NCBI RefSeq assembly: GCF_001194135.2
Contig: NC_068993.1
Span: 61,583,896-61,647,895, forward strand
Source of the DNA: Octopus bimaculoides
Lineage: Eukaryota
Direction of reading: 5' to 3'
Length of the DNA: 64,000 nt
The notes beneath the pieces are model-generated. The model did no database searches. It was not told the DNA's origin and saw nothing but the letters and a program-made list of their open reading frames with translations. A program made the translations under genes and the position numbers. This document shows, piece after piece, positions 4,362 to 64,000 of this stretch; within the stretch, counting starts at the first letter, position 1, and each line of letters begins with the position of its first letter.

Positions 4362-7300
4362 ATGGAGAACACACCGAAAGATTTAACGGAAGAACTTTCT
4401 CATGAATTTGAAGGTCTGAATATTATATTTCTCTTTCATTTCATTTACTTTAATCTTATGTTTGAATGAGTTGACATATATTATTTTATGTTGCTTTTTT
4501 TTGTAAGCTGTTATATAATACCACTTGTGTGACTGATTTATTGAAATATCTAAATATCTAACAGTATTATTAACTGAGAAGACAGTTTTATAGCAATATT
4601 CTACAGTTATATAAAGGCGGTGAGCTGGCAGAAACGTTAGCACGTCGGGCGAAATGCTTAACGGTATTTCGTCTGTCTTTATGTTCTGAGCTCAAATTCC
4701 CCGAGGTCGACTTTGCTTTTCATCCTTTTAGAGTCAATAAATTAAGTACTAGTTGCGCACTGGGGTCGATCTAATCGACTGGCCTCCTCCCGCAAAATTT
4801 CAAGCCTTGTGCCTAGAGTAGAAAATAATATTCACATGTCAACTTTTTAGATTAAAAAAAAATACCCGAACAGGTTGTTCCATTGATCTGATCAACTGGA
4901 ACAATCTCATCATAATCGACAGAGTACCAGCCCCCACGTTTTTTTTCCACACACCGAATTCTATGTGTAATTAAAAGTAACGTGTGCATAAATCGAATAT
5001 GAGATAATCGACAGGATATTTTGTCTTCATTGTATACACAACATTCAGGAGTATAAAGCGCAGCTATTTCATAGACAGATCAGCCACTTAACATTCAAGG
5101 TAATTATAAAGCAATATTTTGTTGTATATTGATATCACATTCAAGGTAATGAATGTGACAGAAACAGTAAAATAGCGGACAAACTGTATTGTACTTTATT
5201 GTGTCTGGGTATATTAATTACTACTACGTTCCAACATAGCCGTGCCGTATCATATTATAGACAACTCTATACACATGCTTCAGATTGTTTCGAGGATTTG
5301 CTTTATAAACTTCTTCCAACAATTTAAAAAAATAGTTTTGCAGCATAAACACGACAGAAGAGAAGTGAATAGCATTTTCTCAAGAACACGAGCACGTATT
5401 TCTGTCTTGAAGTGACAAGTGTATAACAGAGATGGTTAGATATTTTCAGATATTTAGATATCCTCTTCTAATACCGAATCTTTCGCTCATTCTACGTGAG
5501 TGCATATGCTTTCAAGGTTCAAACGCAAGAATCAAACTATTTCTAAAGAAATCATGTATTTTATGGTCCTCCACAAACTTTCAAGAATCTTAGAGTCTTC
5601 AAAATAACCATAGAATTTCTACGTATAGTATTAGTTAGAAAATATTAATTGAAATGTGTGTGTACATATACATGTTATTTTTAATTTTAGATTTATCAGA
5701 TTCTCATATTACCGAAGAGATATTAAAGAAATGTTGTGGATATGGACCATTTCAAAAGAAACTTACTCTCTTTGTTTTAATATACGCAATATTTGACGGC
5801 TTGTCAATTTTAACTCTCGTGTTTATAAGAGAGCCTATCGCTTTCGGTTGTTATCCAACAAATTTCAATAAATCGTTGATACCACCAAATATTGCCTTAG
5901 ATGAATTCTTAGATAATATTACTGTTGAAGAGGACAAATGCTCTGTGTATGATCTGGATATAGAAGGAAGCTTTTATGCCCTTCCCACTAGCAACATGAC
6001 AAAGGGGCCATGCAGCAATGGTCGGAAGTTCTACACTAAATTTGGTCTGTCGTCTATAATGTCTGAGGTAAGTAGATCTAATTTCATTGTTTAAAAAAAA
6101 TATATTTTTAGAATTATGTGTTGTGATAATTCCAACAAAACAGTAACTTTCCCACTCAATGACTCCTGTACATATCAATGCAGAATGTCTCTTTCCTGAT
6201 TCTAATAAGATTTCAGCAAAATTAGTTCAAAAGCTTACCAAATCGAATTTGTATGTGTACCAGGAGAAAGCGGAAATTTGTAAAGTTTTGTGCTGGAACT
6301 TTTCTAACTTTAAACACAAAAGACATCACTAATAACGGGATCAAGAAAAGTTTTAATACTTCCTATGACCAAGGTAACCCCCCCCCACACAGAGTATGGA
6401 TACATATATATATAGTTTTCATGCAAAATTAAGATTGTTAAACATGGCTTTGTAATAGTGTTTAACAAGCAACTATATTACTATTGCTTATTCCCTATTA
6501 TTTTTTTCCAGTTTGATTTGGTTTGTGAAAGAGAATGGATGAACAACTTCGCAATATCTGCAATGTTTGGTGGTGTCCTAGTTGGATGTTCAGTTTTTGG
6601 TTTAGTTTCCGATAAGTAAGTTAAATTTGAATCTCCCATAATAATTTACTATGAAATTAACATATAACATTTTAGTGAAGAACTAGATTAAATTGTTAAA
6701 ATGATCGTCTAAACTTTTGATTAAAAGATATGACATTATAACCAAGCATTAACAAAAGCAACGATAGATTTGCTTTTATGAACTTTATCAAAAGTTATCA
6801 CCCCAAAGCAGGACATGATAGAAGAAAACCGAGTAAACATTCGTGTCCAGCGCATCCAAATCCGATTCAATAGACAAAAAAAATTGAAATTTGTTCCCTA
6901 AAGATCATTTTGGTATCAGTGACTTAATTCGTGTCACTCGCTGTTTCCAACGTTGGTATGTATATATTCCATCATATAAAAGCACTACGGATGGTCAATC
7001 TATTTATAAAGAACTACCAACCTTGTGGTCAATATACTGGTAGCATTGGGCAGCGAGCTGGCAGAATCGTTAGCACGCCAGACAAAATGCTTGGCGGCAT
7101 TTCGTCCGTCTTTACGTTTTGGGTTTAAAATTCCGTCGAGGTCGACTTTGCCTTTCATCCTTTCTAGTTCGATAAAACAAGTACCAGTTGCGTACTGGGG
7201 CCGATGTAATCGACTTACTCCGTCCCTCGAAATTGGTAGCCTTGAAACAAAATTTGAAACTAATATTCTGCTAGTTGTATTTGGTGAAAAGATCTAAGAA

Positions 7301-10300
7301 AAGTACTGCAGTAAACAAGATCTCGTGGCTGAAGAAAGAAGTATGTTCTTTCTTTTTTGTTACTTTTATATCTGGTTGTATACATTTTTTTCTGCTTTGA
7401 TGCTTAGATTCAGCAGATAGGTCTCGTATCAGTTCATATAGGTTGTTATTAGTTTATAGAAAACTGCATTGTAGTAAAAAAAAACCCCCAAAAACTTGGT
7501 TTTTATTTTCACTGCTACCATATGAGCAGGCATAGAAGTAAATAATGGAAAGGGAAGTTTCTTTGCAATGTGTTACATGTTTCTTTGCAGATTCCCAATC
7601 AGGATATTCTCATGTTCGTTTTTCATAACAACTGAAGTCTTTCATATTAACAAGACAAAAATAACAACCACAGTTGTTCTTTTTTGTGGCTTCCGTCACA
7701 CCCCAGGTACTCCTTTGTTTCAATTTTCCTTTACCTTTTTGTCCAGTCCTAAAGGAACTCTACATAGATCTCATATAACTTATAGAATACATATGACTTA
7801 TCTTGATGTCCAAACTTTTCTCCAAAATAAGAAAGATGTGCTCGTTTCACAACAGCCAGTGATATTCTCTCTATGATTTCCTATAGTATATTTACCACAG
7901 ATGTACTAAAATGCATTTAGATTGTTCATACAAGCTCTTCGTGATGAACTCTTATTTACTTCATTAATTTCCAGAAAATAATAAAAAGTATATTATTAAA
8001 TCTGGGCGACAATTTTAAAGTCAAGTTTGCAATAAAGATAATTAAATAATAGTGTAGAAGAGTAAAATATGTTGATAAACATCCTGCTACCTTGTCTGAT
8101 ATATATATATATATATATATATCATCATGTTGAACTGTTAATCCCTATACATATTTTTCTCTCTCCGTTTTTTATCTCTCACAATCCTTTCTGTCGAAGA
8201 CTGTAGGCTCGAAACGTCAAAGTCTTTTCCATTCTTCCTGAGCGTTAAACTAAGACACCTGCTTGTTGTTCCTTCACTTGTCTTCGTCTTATGTTTTCTG
8301 TAAATTTTAACTACATACATACATACCTATATCTATCTATCTATCTATCTATCCAGTGAATTGGATGCTTAACACACTCCTTTGAAGGATTTCTTTTCCT
8401 CAGTTTGTTACTATATATATATATATATATATATATATATNNNNNNNNNNNNNNNNNNNNNNNNNNNNNNNNNNNNNNNNNNNNNNNNNNNNNNTATATA
8501 TATTTGTGTGTGTTTCTATGTTTCTTTTCCCTGTTTTAACCTCCTCTTCTCAAGATAAAGAATTTCTTTTATTTTTCATTCATTTACTCTATTGGAGCCA
8601 ATTTCACAACCCCTTTCTATTAATCCTCATTTCCCCTTGTTACTTCTGCTTTGCGTCTCTTATAGAAAATTAAACATCAAGAACAAAATGCAGAAGCAAT
8701 ATTTAGACCCAATGTTTCTATATTTTACAGATTCGGCCGCTTCAAAACGTTCTTAATCGGAGAAATTGTATTCATGTGTGCCCTTTTAATCAGAATACAT
8801 TCACCAAATTATGCTGTATTTGCAATTATGTACTTCATGGAAGGATTTGGCGAGGCAGGCACATATCCGATAATATATACCCTTCGTAAGTGGTTCAAAA
8901 TCCTTATATGCAAAGACGATTTGGTTTTGTTTCAGCAGATGAACGTCGATGTTGTTGGCGTATTTAGTAGCTATTGTGGTGTTTGGGGTGAAATCTTTTA
9001 TGAAGTGATTATGGATAATTTATAAAACCTTTGGTCTATCATTGTTATCGAGATTTCCAGCTGGAAAGAAGCTTTACGGACAAGGAGTGCTGACAACAGC
9101 GCTTTATTGAGACTCACGGAGACAAAACAGTTCTCTACTCTTTTATTCTGGATCCAGCTGTGTCCTTTGTAAAGACCATCCAACGGCAGATATATTTCTT
9201 CAAGTTTATCACAACGGCATGGCAAAGAATTTTGAAAGGCCAGAGGAGACAGCTTTTCTTTTGACGCAACCCCAACTCTTATGAAATTCCAAACATAACA
9301 ATTGAAAGCATAAAATTGTGGTGGTGGTAGTAGAGGAGGAGGAGGAGGAGGAGGAGGAGAAAAGTCTCCCTCACTAGTAAACTTGTTGAAATTTCGAGAA
9401 GCGAATATAGTCAATTAAATCTACAACGATCCTTGGTTGATACATAGTTTATCGATTTACTGACTCGAGAAGAAACGCCGAATAATGTAAGAATTGACCC
9501 CCAAAACTAAAGAATATTTAACACTTGCCTCTCTAAAGTAATTTTTTTCTAAACGTCCTTGCTTATTTTGAGACTTTTCGTTAGCCATTGTGAGTCATAT
9601 AAAGATGTCGTGTCATAAGTCCCAAATTTGGAATGTGTACCATTTAAGATGCATGAACGCCAAGGAAATATGTCCTATCTTTATTACATTTGATGGACAG
9701 AACAGGCAAAGGGTTAACTATCTTTCTTGTCCGACACTTTATTGATTCTGCCATCGACTGCTATGCCCTAAAAAATTATCATTTTTAATTTGATGAAAGG
9801 CCACATATTCTAACCCAAGTATGTTACCGATACTTATTCAGTTAGTCGACACAGGTATGATTTGAACTTAGAACGTTTTGAAAAAAATGCATAACCCTCA
9901 CCAAATATTTTAGAAAGCCTTCTATCGAAATTGTAAATCAGCTGCCAAATTTTGGCATAAGGCATTGAGAGGGTTGACTATCAATTAAATAGGTATCTTA
10001 TTGACTTCCGGGAAGGCGAGTGTCGATTTTGGAGGGATTAAAATTGTTGAAGTTGTAACTAAGTTCCACAAAGCTTATAATACGATGTTGCTCTACCGCA
10101 TTGCATTTATAGGCAGTTGCTCTACCGATTCTAGTATCTACACTCTTCGATGAAAGAAAAAATATGTGATAATATTTGAATTTTTACTAATGTTGTGTAA
10201 TAAACCCAAACATTTGATATTATCAAGAAATTACATTATGATACTTTTTCTCTATTGCAGTGCTAGAATGTGTAACAAAAAATTATCGAATGCCTTTGAA

Positions 10301-63911: not shown

Positions 63912-64000
63912 CTACAAATTATCCATATCTTCAAGTGTTTGAAGTAAACAAGCATCCTTCGTTTCAGGAAGTAAAAGGACCAGCAAACCAGCAACAATTC
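63912..64000 (-). CDS. SLC22/Orct-like paralogue G5, 3' part of the last coding exon (gene continues beyond the window)
   Basis: The minus strand reads [29 protein letters not shown]-stop, homologous to the last exon of G1-G4. Confidence 0.9.
   Translation of the reverse strand, partial: IVAGLLVLLLPETKDACLLQTLEDMDNL

What the first reader, a model, noticed from the sequence alone, without database searches (positions are those of the whole stretch)
4362..64000. Tandem expansion of at least five intact, diverged SLC22/Orct-like transporters
Seen: four complete 9-exon paralogues with no stops or frameshifts, plus a fifth running off the window. The exons have stayed intact while the introns filled with decayed transposons. 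The proteins differ substantially (exon 3 of G1 vs G2 is identical at only about 20 of 35 residues). Established: SLC22 proteins are polyspecific carriers of organic cations, anions and zwitterions. Inference: this is a lineage-specific, selectively maintained transporter array, possibly for excretion, detoxification, or biogenic-amine handling in cephalopod organs. I do not know of it being characterised, but cannot check.
Basis: partly seen in the sequence, partly recalled or inferred. Interest (0 to 1): 0.7.

Follow-up and report, generated by a model that had tools for sequence, protein, structure and literature searches.

The report
Octopus-specific cluster of SLC22 transporter genes
This stretch of an Octopus bimaculoides chromosome carries four complete, diverged SLC22-family small-molecule transporter genes plus the tail of a fifth; they belong to a cluster of at least eight copies that arose within the octopus lineage, is kept by selection, is already machine-annotated, and has never been studied.

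Summary
The window is O. bimaculoides CM046613.1:61,583,896-61,647,895. It contains four complete SLC22 genes, each with 9 coding exons, GT-AG at every junction and no internal stops. They are identical to RefSeq models XP_014786483, XP_014786490, XP_052828501 and XP_014786494. All nine assembly gaps lie in introns or between genes and are flanked by (TA)n/(CA)n repeats.

Two corrections. The orientation is + + - - -, not uniformly head-to-tail. The fifth copy is only 28 codons in the window, and outside it exon 7 falls in a gap, so its intactness is unproven.

The array continues to at least 8 genes over about 150 kb and is collinear in O. sinensis. Every O. bimaculoides copy has a 100%-bootstrap O. 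sinensis orthologue. The array clade is monophyletic (100%); a single Argonauta protein is its sister, and the cuttlefish homologue falls outside.

Paralogues are 57-68% identical (dS 0.57-0.78, dN/dS 0.32-0.39). Orthologue dN/dS is 0.30-0.44, with all CIs below 1.

Fold and motifs are SLC22. The OCT1-3 cation-binding Asp is Arg, and positions that set OCT ligand specificity vary between the copies.

Verdict: real and lineage-specific, but an ordinary kind of gene-family expansion. Substrates and tissues are unknown.

The parts
4362..13005 (+). G1: complete SLC22 gene, 9 coding exons, 561 aa (= XP_014786483.1 / P0010). Exons: 4362-4413, 5691-6067, 6512-6615, 8731-8885, 10261-10432, 11084-11377, 11509-11723, 11871-11979, 12798-13002. 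Stop TAG at 13003-13005.
   Evidence: The RefSeq protein maps by exact spliced alignment, with every junction GT-AG. CDS is 1683 nt with no internal stop. Pfam Sugar_tr and MFS_1 hit; TIGR00898 E=4.7e-104. The O. sinensis orthologue P0271 is 89.8% identical, with dN/dS 0.30. Gap 8441-8494 lies in intron 3.
15039..23883 (+). G2: complete SLC22 gene, 9 coding exons, 552 aa (= XP_014786490.1 / P0272). Exons: 15039-15072 (a short exon 1 of 34 nt), 15513-15886, 16428-16531, 17909-18063, 19139-19310, 19725-20012, 20978-21192, 22681-22789, 23676-23880. Stop TAA at 23881-23883.
   Evidence: Exons 2-9 were mapped with P0001. I found exon 1 by similarity to the other copies' exon 1. The resulting 552-aa product is identical to RefSeq isoform X1. 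Gap 20261-20834 lies in intron 6. The O. sinensis relative P0002 is 85.8% identical, with dN/dS 0.44.
28204..36830 (-). G3: complete SLC22 gene, 9 coding exons, 564 aa (= XP_052828501.1 / P0004). Exons in transcription order: 36830-36767, 35329-34950, 33667-33564, 32569-32415, 32061-31890, 30554-30267, 30072-29858, 28838-28730, 28411-28207. Stop TAG at 28206-28204.
   Evidence: Exact spliced mapping with every junction GT-AG and no gaps inside the gene. The best PDB sequence hits are OCT3, OCT2, OCT1, OCTN2 and OAT1. The AF2 model has pLDDT 87.3 and pTM 0.84. Foldseek gives TM-scores of 0.8-0.9 to URAT1, OCTN2, OCT2 and OAT1. The O. sinensis orthologue P0006 pairs with it at 100% bootstrap.
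44157..60183 (-). G4: complete SLC22 gene, 9 coding exons, 553 aa (= XP_014786494.1 / P0008). Exons in transcription order: 60183-60120, 58015-57642, 53183-53080, 52347-52193, 50221-50050, 48507-48247, 47337-47123, 45920-45812, 44364-44160. Stop TAG at 44159-44157.
   Evidence: Exact spliced mapping with every junction GT-AG. Three gaps (50493-50736, 52436-52489, 54557-55074) are all intronic. The O. sinensis orthologue P0276 is 90.1% identical, has dN/dS 0.34, and shares the copy-specific 261-nt exon 6.
63912..64000 (-). G5: 3' end of the last coding exon of a fifth paralogue (28 codons ...LLQTLEDMDNL plus TAG). The gene continues beyond the window end.
   Evidence: tblastn finds the fragment and the sequence was read directly. 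In the chromosome sequence beyond the window, exons 5, 6, 8 and 9 are open and match model P0018, but the end of exon 6 and all of exon 7 lie in a gap. Intactness is therefore not established.

Best explanation
The window is the proximal half of a cluster of SLC22 genes that arose within the octopus lineage. SLC22 is a family within the major facilitator superfamily (MFS). The cluster has grown and changed by repeated local duplication, one inversion of orientation, occasional copy loss or gain, and possibly gene conversion.

Each gene encodes a 12-helix MFS carrier with the SLC22 hallmarks: a large glycosylated, cysteine-containing extracellular loop between TM1 and TM2, and a long cytoplasmic loop between TM6 and TM7.

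By homology these proteins should work as alternating-access, polyspecific carriers of small organic ions across the plasma membrane (inferred, not shown).

The copies keep the common SLC22 scaffold and pocket residues. They differ at the very pocket positions that determine ligand preference among human OCT1-3, which suggests partitioning or diversification of substrate range between copies (inferred).

They carry Arg where OCT1-3 have the cation-binding Asp, and they lack two more of OCT3's pathway acidic residues. They are therefore more likely to be OCTN/OAT/Orct-type carriers of zwitterions, anions or mixed substrates than classical OCT-type monoamine or cation uniporters (inferred, moderate confidence).

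Shown here: gene structures, intactness, family membership, clade restriction, synteny and purifying selection. Inferred: transport function, substrate class, subfunctionalisation and physiological role.
For: **Gene models.** Four genes each have 9 coding exons, GT-AG junctions and no stops, and are identical to RefSeq products.

**Family membership**
- Pfam Sugar_tr and MFS_1 hit.
- TIGR00898 is by far the best NCBIfam model, at E=1e-100 to 1e-107.
- The best PDB sequence hits are all SLC22, at E=1e-55 to 1e-67.
- The AF2 model (pLDDT 87, pTM 0.84) matches URAT1, OCTN2, OCT1-3 and OAT1 at TM-scores of 0.8-0.9.
- The SLC22 signature before TM2 (S[ST]I[VM]SEF[DE]LxC), the MFS loop motif (G-x3-D-[KR]-F-G-R), PESPRW, three extracellular-loop cysteines and 3-4 N-glycosylation sequons are present in all four.

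**Lineage restriction**
- The array clade has 100% bootstrap, and Argonauta is its sister at 79-81%.
- Cuttlefish P0263 groups with O. sinensis P0017 at 89-99%.
- An exhaustive search of 1.84 billion cluster representatives found nothing closer than 48% identity outside Octopus.

**Cluster size and synteny**
- O. bimaculoides has at least 8 genes between 61.588 and 61.738 Mb.
- O. sinensis is collinear, with the same + + - - - pattern plus extra copies.

**Selection**
- Paralogue dN/dS is 0.32-0.39, with CI upper bounds of 0.48 or less.
- Orthologue dN/dS is 0.30, 0.34 and 0.44 at dS of about 0.14-0.16.

**Pocket residues** (OCT3 pocket list taken from PMC9640557)
- E232, W358, Y365, E390 and E459 are conserved.
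- D155 becomes N, D382 becomes N, and D478 becomes R in every copy.
- The positions of F36, I254, E451 and Y454 vary among the copies: I/G/V/L, E/E/E/G, G/F/D/V and Y/Y/F/F in G1-G4.
Against: - I had no expression data, so transcription and tissue specificity of each copy are unverified. RefSeq isoform models hint at RNA support but are not proof.
- There is no functional assay; the substrate class is inferred from a handful of homologous positions.
- dN/dS of 0.3-0.44 is fairly high, so constraint is relaxed relative to typical housekeeping genes.
- I ran no site-specific test for positive selection, so 'diversification' at pocket positions could be neutral drift at tolerant sites.
- The trees are neighbour-joining only. 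Octopod sampling outside the genus Octopus is one Argonauta protein, so the timing of the expansion is coarse.
- The TIGR00898 scores (336-359 bits) are below that model's curated cutoff (550.75 bits).
Confidence: 0.85

Rival explanations
1. The proteins are classical OCT1-3-type organic cation / monoamine uptake carriers, as the 'organic cation transporter protein' annotation and the reader's biogenic-amine idea imply.
For: The top PDB sequence hits are OCT3, OCT2 and OCT1. The pathway acidic residues E232, E390 and E459 are conserved. Most copies have an extra Glu at the OCT3 I254 position, and some have Asp at the E451 position, so a cation could still be coordinated.
Against: The key TM11 Asp (hOCT3 D478, equivalent to hOCT1 D474) is Arg in every array member, as it is in Drosophila Orct, SLC22A6, A13 and A15. 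D155 and D382 are Asn. Foldseek ranks URAT1 and OCTN2 at least as high as the OCTs. In the trees the cephalopod clade is not nested with any vertebrate subfamily.
Confidence: 0.15
2. Some of the four copies are transcriptionally silent or functionally redundant relics that have not yet picked up disabling mutations.
For: dN/dS of 0.3-0.44 is relatively relaxed. G2 has an abbreviated first exon, and its O. sinensis relative uses a different first exon. Copy number differs between species. I had no expression evidence.
Against: At paralogue dS of 0.57-0.78, about 1.7 kb of unconstrained CDS would be expected to carry stops or indels, yet none occurs in the four genes and all 32 splice-site pairs are intact. 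Each of G1, G2 and G4 shows dN/dS significantly below 1 against its own O. sinensis orthologue. Copy-specific exon lengths are preserved across species.
Confidence: 0.1
3. The array is an old molluscan or cephalopod family with one-to-one orthologues in distant taxa, not an octopus-lineage expansion.
For: One-to-one orthologues do exist between O. bimaculoides and O. sinensis for all copies. Duplication dS is about 4-5 times the dS between those species, so the duplications are not recent. Sampling of other octopods and of decapodiform cephalopods in the databases is thin.
Against: The array clade is monophyletic at 100%, with one Argonauta sequence outside it. The cuttlefish homologue is orthologous to a different octopus gene, P0017. 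The Elysia, annelid, nemertean, fly and vertebrate sequences all fall outside. The exhaustive representative search found no closer relatives.
Confidence: 0.05
4. The copies are assembly or haplotype duplicates created by a gap-rich short-read assembly.
For: The window has nine gaps. Just outside it, one pair (G5 and the P0026 gene) is about 93% identical, shares a 319-bp stretch at 99.4% identity, and sits next to gaps.
Against: G1-G4 differ by 22-29% in CDS nucleotides and 32-43% in protein. Their introns have different lengths and content. The same genes in the same order occur in an independent assembly of another species.
Confidence: 0.01

Closest known systems
SLC22 family (TCDB 2.A.1.19; TIGR00898), covering OCT1-3, OCTN1/2, OAT1-4, URAT1 and SLC22A13/15/16
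   Same: They share the 12-TM MFS fold with a large TM1-TM2 extracellular domain and a long TM6-TM7 loop. They also share the signature before TM2, the MFS loop motif, PESPRW, and the conserved pocket residues E232, W358, Y365, E390 and E459 in OCT3 numbering.
   Different: Identity to any vertebrate member is only 25-30%. The cephalopod sequences form their own clade and are not orthologous to any single vertebrate subfamily. The residue combination is unusual: Arg at the TM11 position as in OATs, OCTNs and Orct; no basic residue at the TM8 position where fish SLC22A6 has Arg; and an array-specific Glu at the OCT3 I254 position.
Drosophila Orct (organic cation transporter protein), the source of the RefSeq name
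   Same: It belongs to the same family, has similar length and motifs, and carries the TM11 Arg.
   Different: Identity is about 27-31%. It is not an orthologue: Orct groups with annelid, nemertean and amphioxus sequences, outside the cephalopod clade. The name says nothing about substrates in octopus.
A second octopus SLC22 clade on the same chromosome (P0017, P0020-P0024, P0122), with cuttlefish 'SLC22A4_5' as orthologue of P0017
   Same: These are the closest non-array relatives, at 37-48% identity. They are cephalopod-specific, lie on the same chromosome, and are themselves multiplied.
   Different: They form a separate clade. At least P0017 is conserved between octopus and cuttlefish (89-99% bootstrap), whereas no decapodiform member of the array clade was found.
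Lineage-specific tandem SLC22 clusters in other animals (for example the rodent Slc22a19-a30 OAT-like cluster and the enlarged insect SLC22 sets); cited from my own knowledge and not checked here
   Same: The evolutionary mode is the same: local duplication of polyspecific carriers, moderate dN/dS, and variation in pocket residues.
   Different: The octopus array arose independently in a different phylum, and none of its substrates or tissues are known.

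Membership tests
SLC22 (MFS organic ion transporters) | 12-transmembrane MFS fold | tested here: met
   The AF2 model of G3 has pLDDT 87.3 and pTM 0.84, with 12 long helices. Foldseek gives TM-scores of 0.8-0.9 to URAT1, OCTN2, OCT1-3 and OAT1. Pfam Sugar_tr and MFS_1 score above their gathering cutoffs in all four genes.
SLC22 (MFS organic ion transporters) | Large extracellular loop between TM1 and TM2 with conserved cysteines and N-glycosylation sequons | tested here: met
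   A loop of about 80 residues with beta-strands is present in the model. C77, C107, C131 and C153 are nearly invariant across 40 SLC22 sequences. G1-G4 each have 3-4 N-x-S/T sequons and 3 loop cysteines.
SLC22 (MFS organic ion transporters) | Family signature just before TM2 (STIVTEW[DN]LVC-like) | tested here: met
   G1 has SSIMSEFDLVCE, G2 SSIVSEFELVCD, G3 STIVSEFDLTCE and G4 SSIVSEFDLACE, aligned with Orct, OCTN, OAT and SLC22A13. That this motif is the SLC22 signature comes from my own knowledge.
SLC22 (MFS organic ion transporters) | MFS signature in the TM2-TM3 loop (G-x3-D-[RK]-x-G-R-[RK]) | tested here: met
   The motif GxxSD[KR]FGR[FY]K is present in all four genes. D182, G185 and R186 are invariant in the 40-sequence alignment.
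SLC22 (MFS organic ion transporters) | Curated HMM score (NCBIfam TIGR00898 '2A0119 cation transport protein') | tested here: inconclusive
   It is by far the best model (E=4e-100 to 5e-107, 336-359 bits, full-length match), but the scores are below the curated cutoff of 550.75 bits. All the top PDB sequence hits are SLC22.
SLC22 (MFS organic ion transporters) | Carrier-mediated transport of organic ions | not testable with these tools
   This needs heterologous expression and uptake assays.
OCT1-3 subgroup (SLC22A1-3, classical organic cation transporters) | Acidic residue in TM11 (hOCT1 D474 / hOCT3 D478), plus the other acidic residues lining the OCT3 pathway | tested here: not met
   D478 is replaced by Arg in G1-G4 and all array members (one O. 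sinensis extra copy has Lys). D155 and D382 are replaced by Asn. The residue list comes from PMC9640557.
OAT subgroup (SLC22A6-8 and similar) | Basic residues in both TM11 (hOAT1 R466) and TM8 (hOAT1 K382); residue numbers are from my own knowledge | tested here: not met
   The TM11 Arg is present. The TM8 position after the 'IPA' motif is S, S, N and N in G1-G4, whereas fish SLC22A6 has Arg there. In the tree the array is not nested with SLC22A6 or A13.
Tandem gene array (head-to-tail duplicates) | Adjacent paralogues all in the same orientation | tested here: not met
   The orientation is + + - - -, and G2 and G3 are convergent. The same pattern occurs in O. sinensis. It is a clustered local expansion that includes one inversion.
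Lineage-specific expansion | Paralogues monophyletic to the exclusion of homologues from outgroup taxa | tested here: met
   The array clade has 100% bootstrap, Argonauta is its sister at 79-81%, and cuttlefish, gastropod and other phyla fall outside. The limits are that these are NJ trees and that only one non-Octopus octopod sequence was available.

The most novel reading that the evidence does not exclude
The octopus array may be an adaptive radiation of substrate pockets. After duplication in the octopod lineage, the copies diverged specifically at the cavity positions that tune ligand choice in human OCT1-3 (the positions of OCT3 F36, I254, E451 and Y454). They also acquired an array-specific Glu opposite the conserved TM11 Arg.

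That would create a set of carriers for octopus-specific small molecules. Candidates include the very abundant salivary-gland amines, thiol-histidine zwitterions, or dietary and symbiont toxins, each handled in a particular organ such as the renal appendages, branchial hearts, posterior salivary gland or suckers.
Probability: 0.25. Interest if true: 0.55.

Novelty: new member of a known kind. Interest (0 to 1): 0.3.

Why it matters
Cephalopod genome papers have emphasised expansions of protocadherins, zinc-finger genes and a few other families. I found no paper in the library that mentions an SLC22 expansion in octopus.

The cluster has at least 8 members in O. bimaculoides and at least 11 in O. 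sinensis. It is under purifying selection, its pocket residues are diversified, and it is restricted to the octopod lineage. That makes it a concrete and tractable entry point to cephalopod excretion, detoxification and small-molecule handling, about which almost nothing is known at the molecular level.

It also warns against reading the automatic name 'organic cation transporter protein' as a statement about substrates. In kind, though, it is an ordinary birth-and-death expansion of a family that is known to expand repeatedly in animals.

Tried and rejected
- **First orthology picture was wrong.** After the first trees I thought G1 and G4 lacked O. sinensis orthologues. That was an artefact of the protein database's 90% clustering. 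Listing cluster members revealed P0271 and P0276, and the final tree gives 100% orthologue pairs for every copy.
- **The fifth copy is not the P0026 gene.** I first assumed it was, because the last exon is 100% identical at protein level. Chromosome coordinates show that P0026 lies about 25 kb further on, and that the window's fragment belongs to a separate P0018-like gene.
- **P0003 lookup failed.** Only a gene's longest isoform is indexed. The gene was found through P0278 instead.
- **Transposase ORFs in Pfam.** Pfam scans of the intronic and intergenic transposase-like ORFs gave only a sub-threshold HTH_48 hit and one spurious hit. A PDB sequence search was needed to confirm the mariner relic. 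Translating 16704-17236 as one frame failed because it contains 6 stops, which itself shows decay.
- **RNA scans found nothing.** The tRNA scan, run to test whether the SINE-like repeat is tRNA-derived, and the Rfam scan both returned no hits.
- **No expression evidence from Logan.** The clusters for G1-G4 contain only genome-derived annotation entries.
- **Literature searches.** Searches for SLC22 or organic cation transporters in octopus or cephalopods returned only incidental mentions.

Full report
**1. Source of the window and the gap question**

The window has 34.7% GC, is rich in microsatellites, and carries nine N-runs. Four O. bimaculoides RefSeq proteins map onto it at 100% identity. 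Gene coordinates returned for those proteins place the window at CM046613.1 (GCA_001194135.2) 61,583,896-61,647,895.

All nine gaps lie in introns (one each in G1 and G2, three in G4) or between genes. None overlaps an exon, and the nearest is 89 nt from one. Eight of the nine abut (TA)n or (CA)n runs on at least one side, which is the usual place for a short-read assembly to break. Continuity of reading frame across the gaps therefore does not matter. The exons on either side splice in the correct phase, and every gene has the full exon set seen in the orthologues from an independent O. sinensis assembly. The G2-G3 intergenic region contains two gaps and is 4.3 kb long. The corresponding O. 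sinensis spacer is 4.8 kb, so no hidden gene fits there.

**2. Gene models**

tblastn with exon-sized peptides located five loci. An exact spliced mapping of the RefSeq proteins gave these models:

| Gene | Strand | Span | Protein |
|---|---|---|---|
| G1 | + | 4362-13002 | 561 aa |
| G3 | - | 36830-28207 | 564 aa |
| G4 | - | 60183-44160 | 553 aa |

Each has nine coding exons and GT-AG at every junction.

For G2 the available protein was an N-terminally short isoform. I found a 34-nt first exon at 15039-15072 by similarity to the first exons of the other copies. The acceptor of exon 2 is at 15513. The resulting 552-aa product is identical to RefSeq isoform X1, XP_014786490.1.

Exon lengths are 52/34/64/64 (exon 1), 377/374/380/374 (exon 2), 104, 155, 172, 294/288/288/261 (exon 6), 215, 109 and 205 nt. 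There are no internal stops, and the stop codons are TAG, TAA, TAG and TAG.

The orientation is + + - - -, so G2 and G3 are convergent. 'Tandem' is true only in the loose sense of 'clustered'.

**3. The fifth copy and the rest of the array**

In the window, G5 is the last 28 codons plus TAG (63912-64000, - strand). The chromosome sequence beyond the window shows its exons 5, 6, 8 and 9, which are open and match the older model P0018. The 3' end of exon 6 and all of exon 7 fall in a 1.9-kb gap, and exons 1-4 lie in a stretch I did not retrieve. G5 therefore shows no defect but is incomplete, and cannot be called intact.

Further along on the - strand lie three more genes:
- A gap-riddled, roughly 93%-identical sister gene (G5b, LOC106880856). 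Its 294-aa RefSeq model is a gap artefact.
- G6 (XP_014786495.2, 564 aa).
- G7 (XP_014786491.1, 556 aa).

The O. bimaculoides array thus has at least 8 genes over about 150 kb.

**4. Family membership**

- All four proteins hit Pfam Sugar_tr and MFS_1.
- TIGR00898 is by far the best NCBIfam model (E down to 5e-107), although the scores are below its strict curated cutoff.
- The best PDB sequence matches are OCT3, OCT2, OCT1, OCTN2, OAT1 and URAT1.
- An AlphaFold2 model of G3 built on a 40-sequence alignment is confident (pLDDT 87.3, pTM 0.84). It shows 12 long helices, a beta-containing extracellular domain between TM1 and TM2, and a long TM6-TM7 loop.
- Foldseek matches it to every solved SLC22 subfamily at TM-scores of 0.8-0.9.
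- The signature before TM2, the MFS loop motif, PESPRW, the loop cysteines and the N-glycosylation sequons are all present.

**5. Substrate-site inference**

I took the OCT3 pocket and pathway residues from the OCT3 structure paper (PMC9640557). I mapped them through the HMMER alignment of G3 to 7zh0 onto all array members.

- **Conserved.** The shared scaffold residues E232, W358, Y365, E390 and E459 are conserved.
- **Replaced.** Three of the seven acidic residues that line the OCT3 pathway are replaced in every copy: D155 by N, D382 by N and D478 by R. Arg at the TM11 position is also the state in Drosophila Orct and in fish SLC22A6, A13 and A15. Asp there is the OCT1-3 peculiarity, so the automatic name 'organic cation transporter protein' is not evidence of substrate class.
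- **Variable.** The positions that the paper singles out as differing between OCT1, 2 and 3 and shaping their ligand preference are the ones that vary among the octopus copies. In G1/G2/G3/G4 the F36 position is I/G/V/L, I254 is E/E/E/G, E451 is G/F/D/V and Y454 is Y/Y/F/F. The Glu at the I254 position is specific to the array.
- **TM8.** The position after the 'IPA' motif, where fish SLC22A6 has Arg, is S/S/N/N.

I read this as a set of carriers with a common mechanism but different pockets. They are more likely OCTN/Orct/OAT-like (zwitterions, anions or mixed substrates) than OCT-like. This is inference only.

**6. Evolution**

*Divergence between the copies.* Pairwise protein identity among G1-G4 is 57-68%. 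Nei-Gojobori dS is 0.57-0.78 and dN/dS is 0.32-0.39, with bootstrap upper bounds of 0.48 or less.

*Phylogeny.* I built neighbour-joining trees (Kimura distances, 515 columns, 200-300 bootstraps).
- All array proteins from O. bimaculoides, O. sinensis and O. vulgaris form one clade (100%).
- The single Argonauta hians protein is its sister (79-81%).
- A second octopus SLC22 clade comes next.
- The cuttlefish 'SLC22A4_5' protein groups with O. sinensis P0017 inside that second clade (89-99%).
- The Elysia, annelid, nemertean, fly, amphioxus and fish sequences all lie outside.

An exhaustive HMMER scan of 1.84 billion cluster representatives found no non-Octopus protein above 48% identity.

*Orthology.* My first impression that G1 and G4 lacked O. 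sinensis orthologues was an artefact of 90% clustering in the database. Cluster listings revealed them. In the final tree every O. bimaculoides gene (G1-G7) pairs with an O. sinensis gene at 100% bootstrap. G5/G5b is an O. bimaculoides-specific duplication (85%). O. sinensis has extra copies: P0005, P0011, P0012 and a second G2-like gene.

*Synteny.* The O. sinensis array is collinear and has the same orientation pattern, but is stretched to about 360 kb.

*Constraint since the species split.*

| Pair | Protein identity | dS | dN/dS (95% CI) |
|---|---|---|---|
| G1 vs P0271 | 89.8% | 0.155 | 0.30 (0.20-0.43) |
| G4 vs P0276 | 90.1% | 0.138 | 0.34 (0.23-0.51) |
| G2 vs P0002 | 85.8% | 0.155 | 0.44 (0.31-0.64) |

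Copy-specific exon lengths are preserved across the species.

*Conclusion.* The duplications post-date the split from the Argonauta lineage, as far as one sequence can tell. They pre-date the O. bimaculoides / O. sinensis split by roughly 4-5 fold in dS. Each copy has been kept under moderately relaxed purifying selection, while copy number continues to change.

**7. Non-coding content**

- 15-22% of intron sequence is repeated within the window. This is chiefly a ~220-bp SINE-like family at 70-88% identity, with copies in the introns of G1-G4 and in the spacers.
- 4.6% of the window is microsatellite.
- A mariner transposase C-terminal relic lies between G3 and G4, at 39180-39431 (SETMAR/Hsmar1-like, E=4e-34).
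- A mariner-like stretch with at least 6 stops lies in G2 intron 2.
- No tRNA or Rfam family was found.

**8. Novelty and verdict**

The genes are already in RefSeq under automatic names. I found no paper on an SLC22 expansion in cephalopods.

However, lineage-specific local expansion is a familiar behaviour of this family. Without expression or transport data the biology remains open. I score it as a new member of a known kind, of modest interest.

Noticed in passing
L002 1-6269 and L001 10001-20395 (CM046613.1, about 61.648-61.683 Mb, just beyond the window end); window 63682-64000: G5 and the next gene (LOC106880856, P0026) are about 93% identical at protein level and share a 319-bp stretch at 99.4% identity around the last exon. 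In the tree they form an O. bimaculoides-specific pair (85%). Both genes are broken by assembly gaps, and the 294-aa RefSeq model of P0026 simply skips the exons hidden in the gaps. They could be a very young duplication or partly an assembly artefact.
   Followed up: partly
window 11509-11723 vs 20978-21192 (exon 7 of G1 and G2); also 28730-28838 vs 45812-45920 (exon 8 of G3 and G4): Exon 7 of the neighbours G1 and G2 is 90% identical in protein with dS 0.30, against 64.5% identity and dS 0.68 for the whole genes. Exon 8 of G3 and G4 has dS 0.20 against 0.57 overall. This may reflect old gene-conversion tracts between adjacent copies. The exons are short, so the estimates are noisy.
   Followed up: partly
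window 36739-36928 vs 60060-60281 (- strand): G3 and G4 share 77-79% nucleotide identity over about 190-227 nt covering exon 1 and roughly 100 nt upstream of the ATG. G1 (4343-4442) and G2 (15042-15114) retain weaker similarity. This is probably a shared 5'UTR or core promoter carried along in the duplications.
   Followed up: no
window 15039-15072; L004 10001-10103: G2's first coding exon is shortened to 34 nt ([11 protein letters not shown]), against 52-64 nt in the other copies. Its O. sinensis relative P0002 is modelled with a different, 103-nt first exon, and O. sinensis has a second G2-like gene (552 aa) immediately upstream. The 5' end of the G2 lineage looks evolutionarily unstable.
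   Followed up: partly
window 645-865, 4614-4833, 7049-7278, 13195-13433, 22072-22293, 29294-29517, 44591-44817, 47485-48066: A ~220-bp interspersed repeat family occurs at 70-88% pairwise identity, in both orientations, in the introns of G1-G4 and in the spacers. ARAGORN found no tRNA-like head. It is probably an octopus SINE but was not classified.
   Followed up: partly
window 39180-39431 (+) and 16704-17236 (+): A mariner transposase C-terminal relic lies in the G3-G4 spacer (E=4e-34 to human SETMAR/Hsmar1, 8e-16 to Mos1). A decayed mariner-like stretch with a weak HTH_48 match and at least 6 stops lies in G2 intron 2.
   Followed up: yes
window gaps at 2162, 8441, 20261, 24774, 26329, 50493, 52436, 54557 and 61595: Eight of the nine assembly gaps abut a (TA)n or (CA)n run on at least one side. 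The assembly breaks at microsatellites, so the stated gap lengths are placeholders.
   Followed up: yes
G1 locus, RefSeq isoform P0015 (469 aa): One RefSeq isoform of G1 skips exon 3, reads exon 4 out of frame and omits exon 5, giving about 50 aberrant residues before rejoining the normal frame at exon 6. It is probably a non-productive or mis-modelled transcript.
   Followed up: no
O. bimaculoides CM046613.1 and O. sinensis CM016871.1, outside the window: Many further SLC22 genes and fragments from a second cephalopod clade (P0017, P0020-P0024, P0122, P0130, P0165, P0177 and others) lie on the same chromosome in both species. SLC22 as a whole seems to be multiplied on this chromosome, not only in the array studied here.
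   Followed up: no
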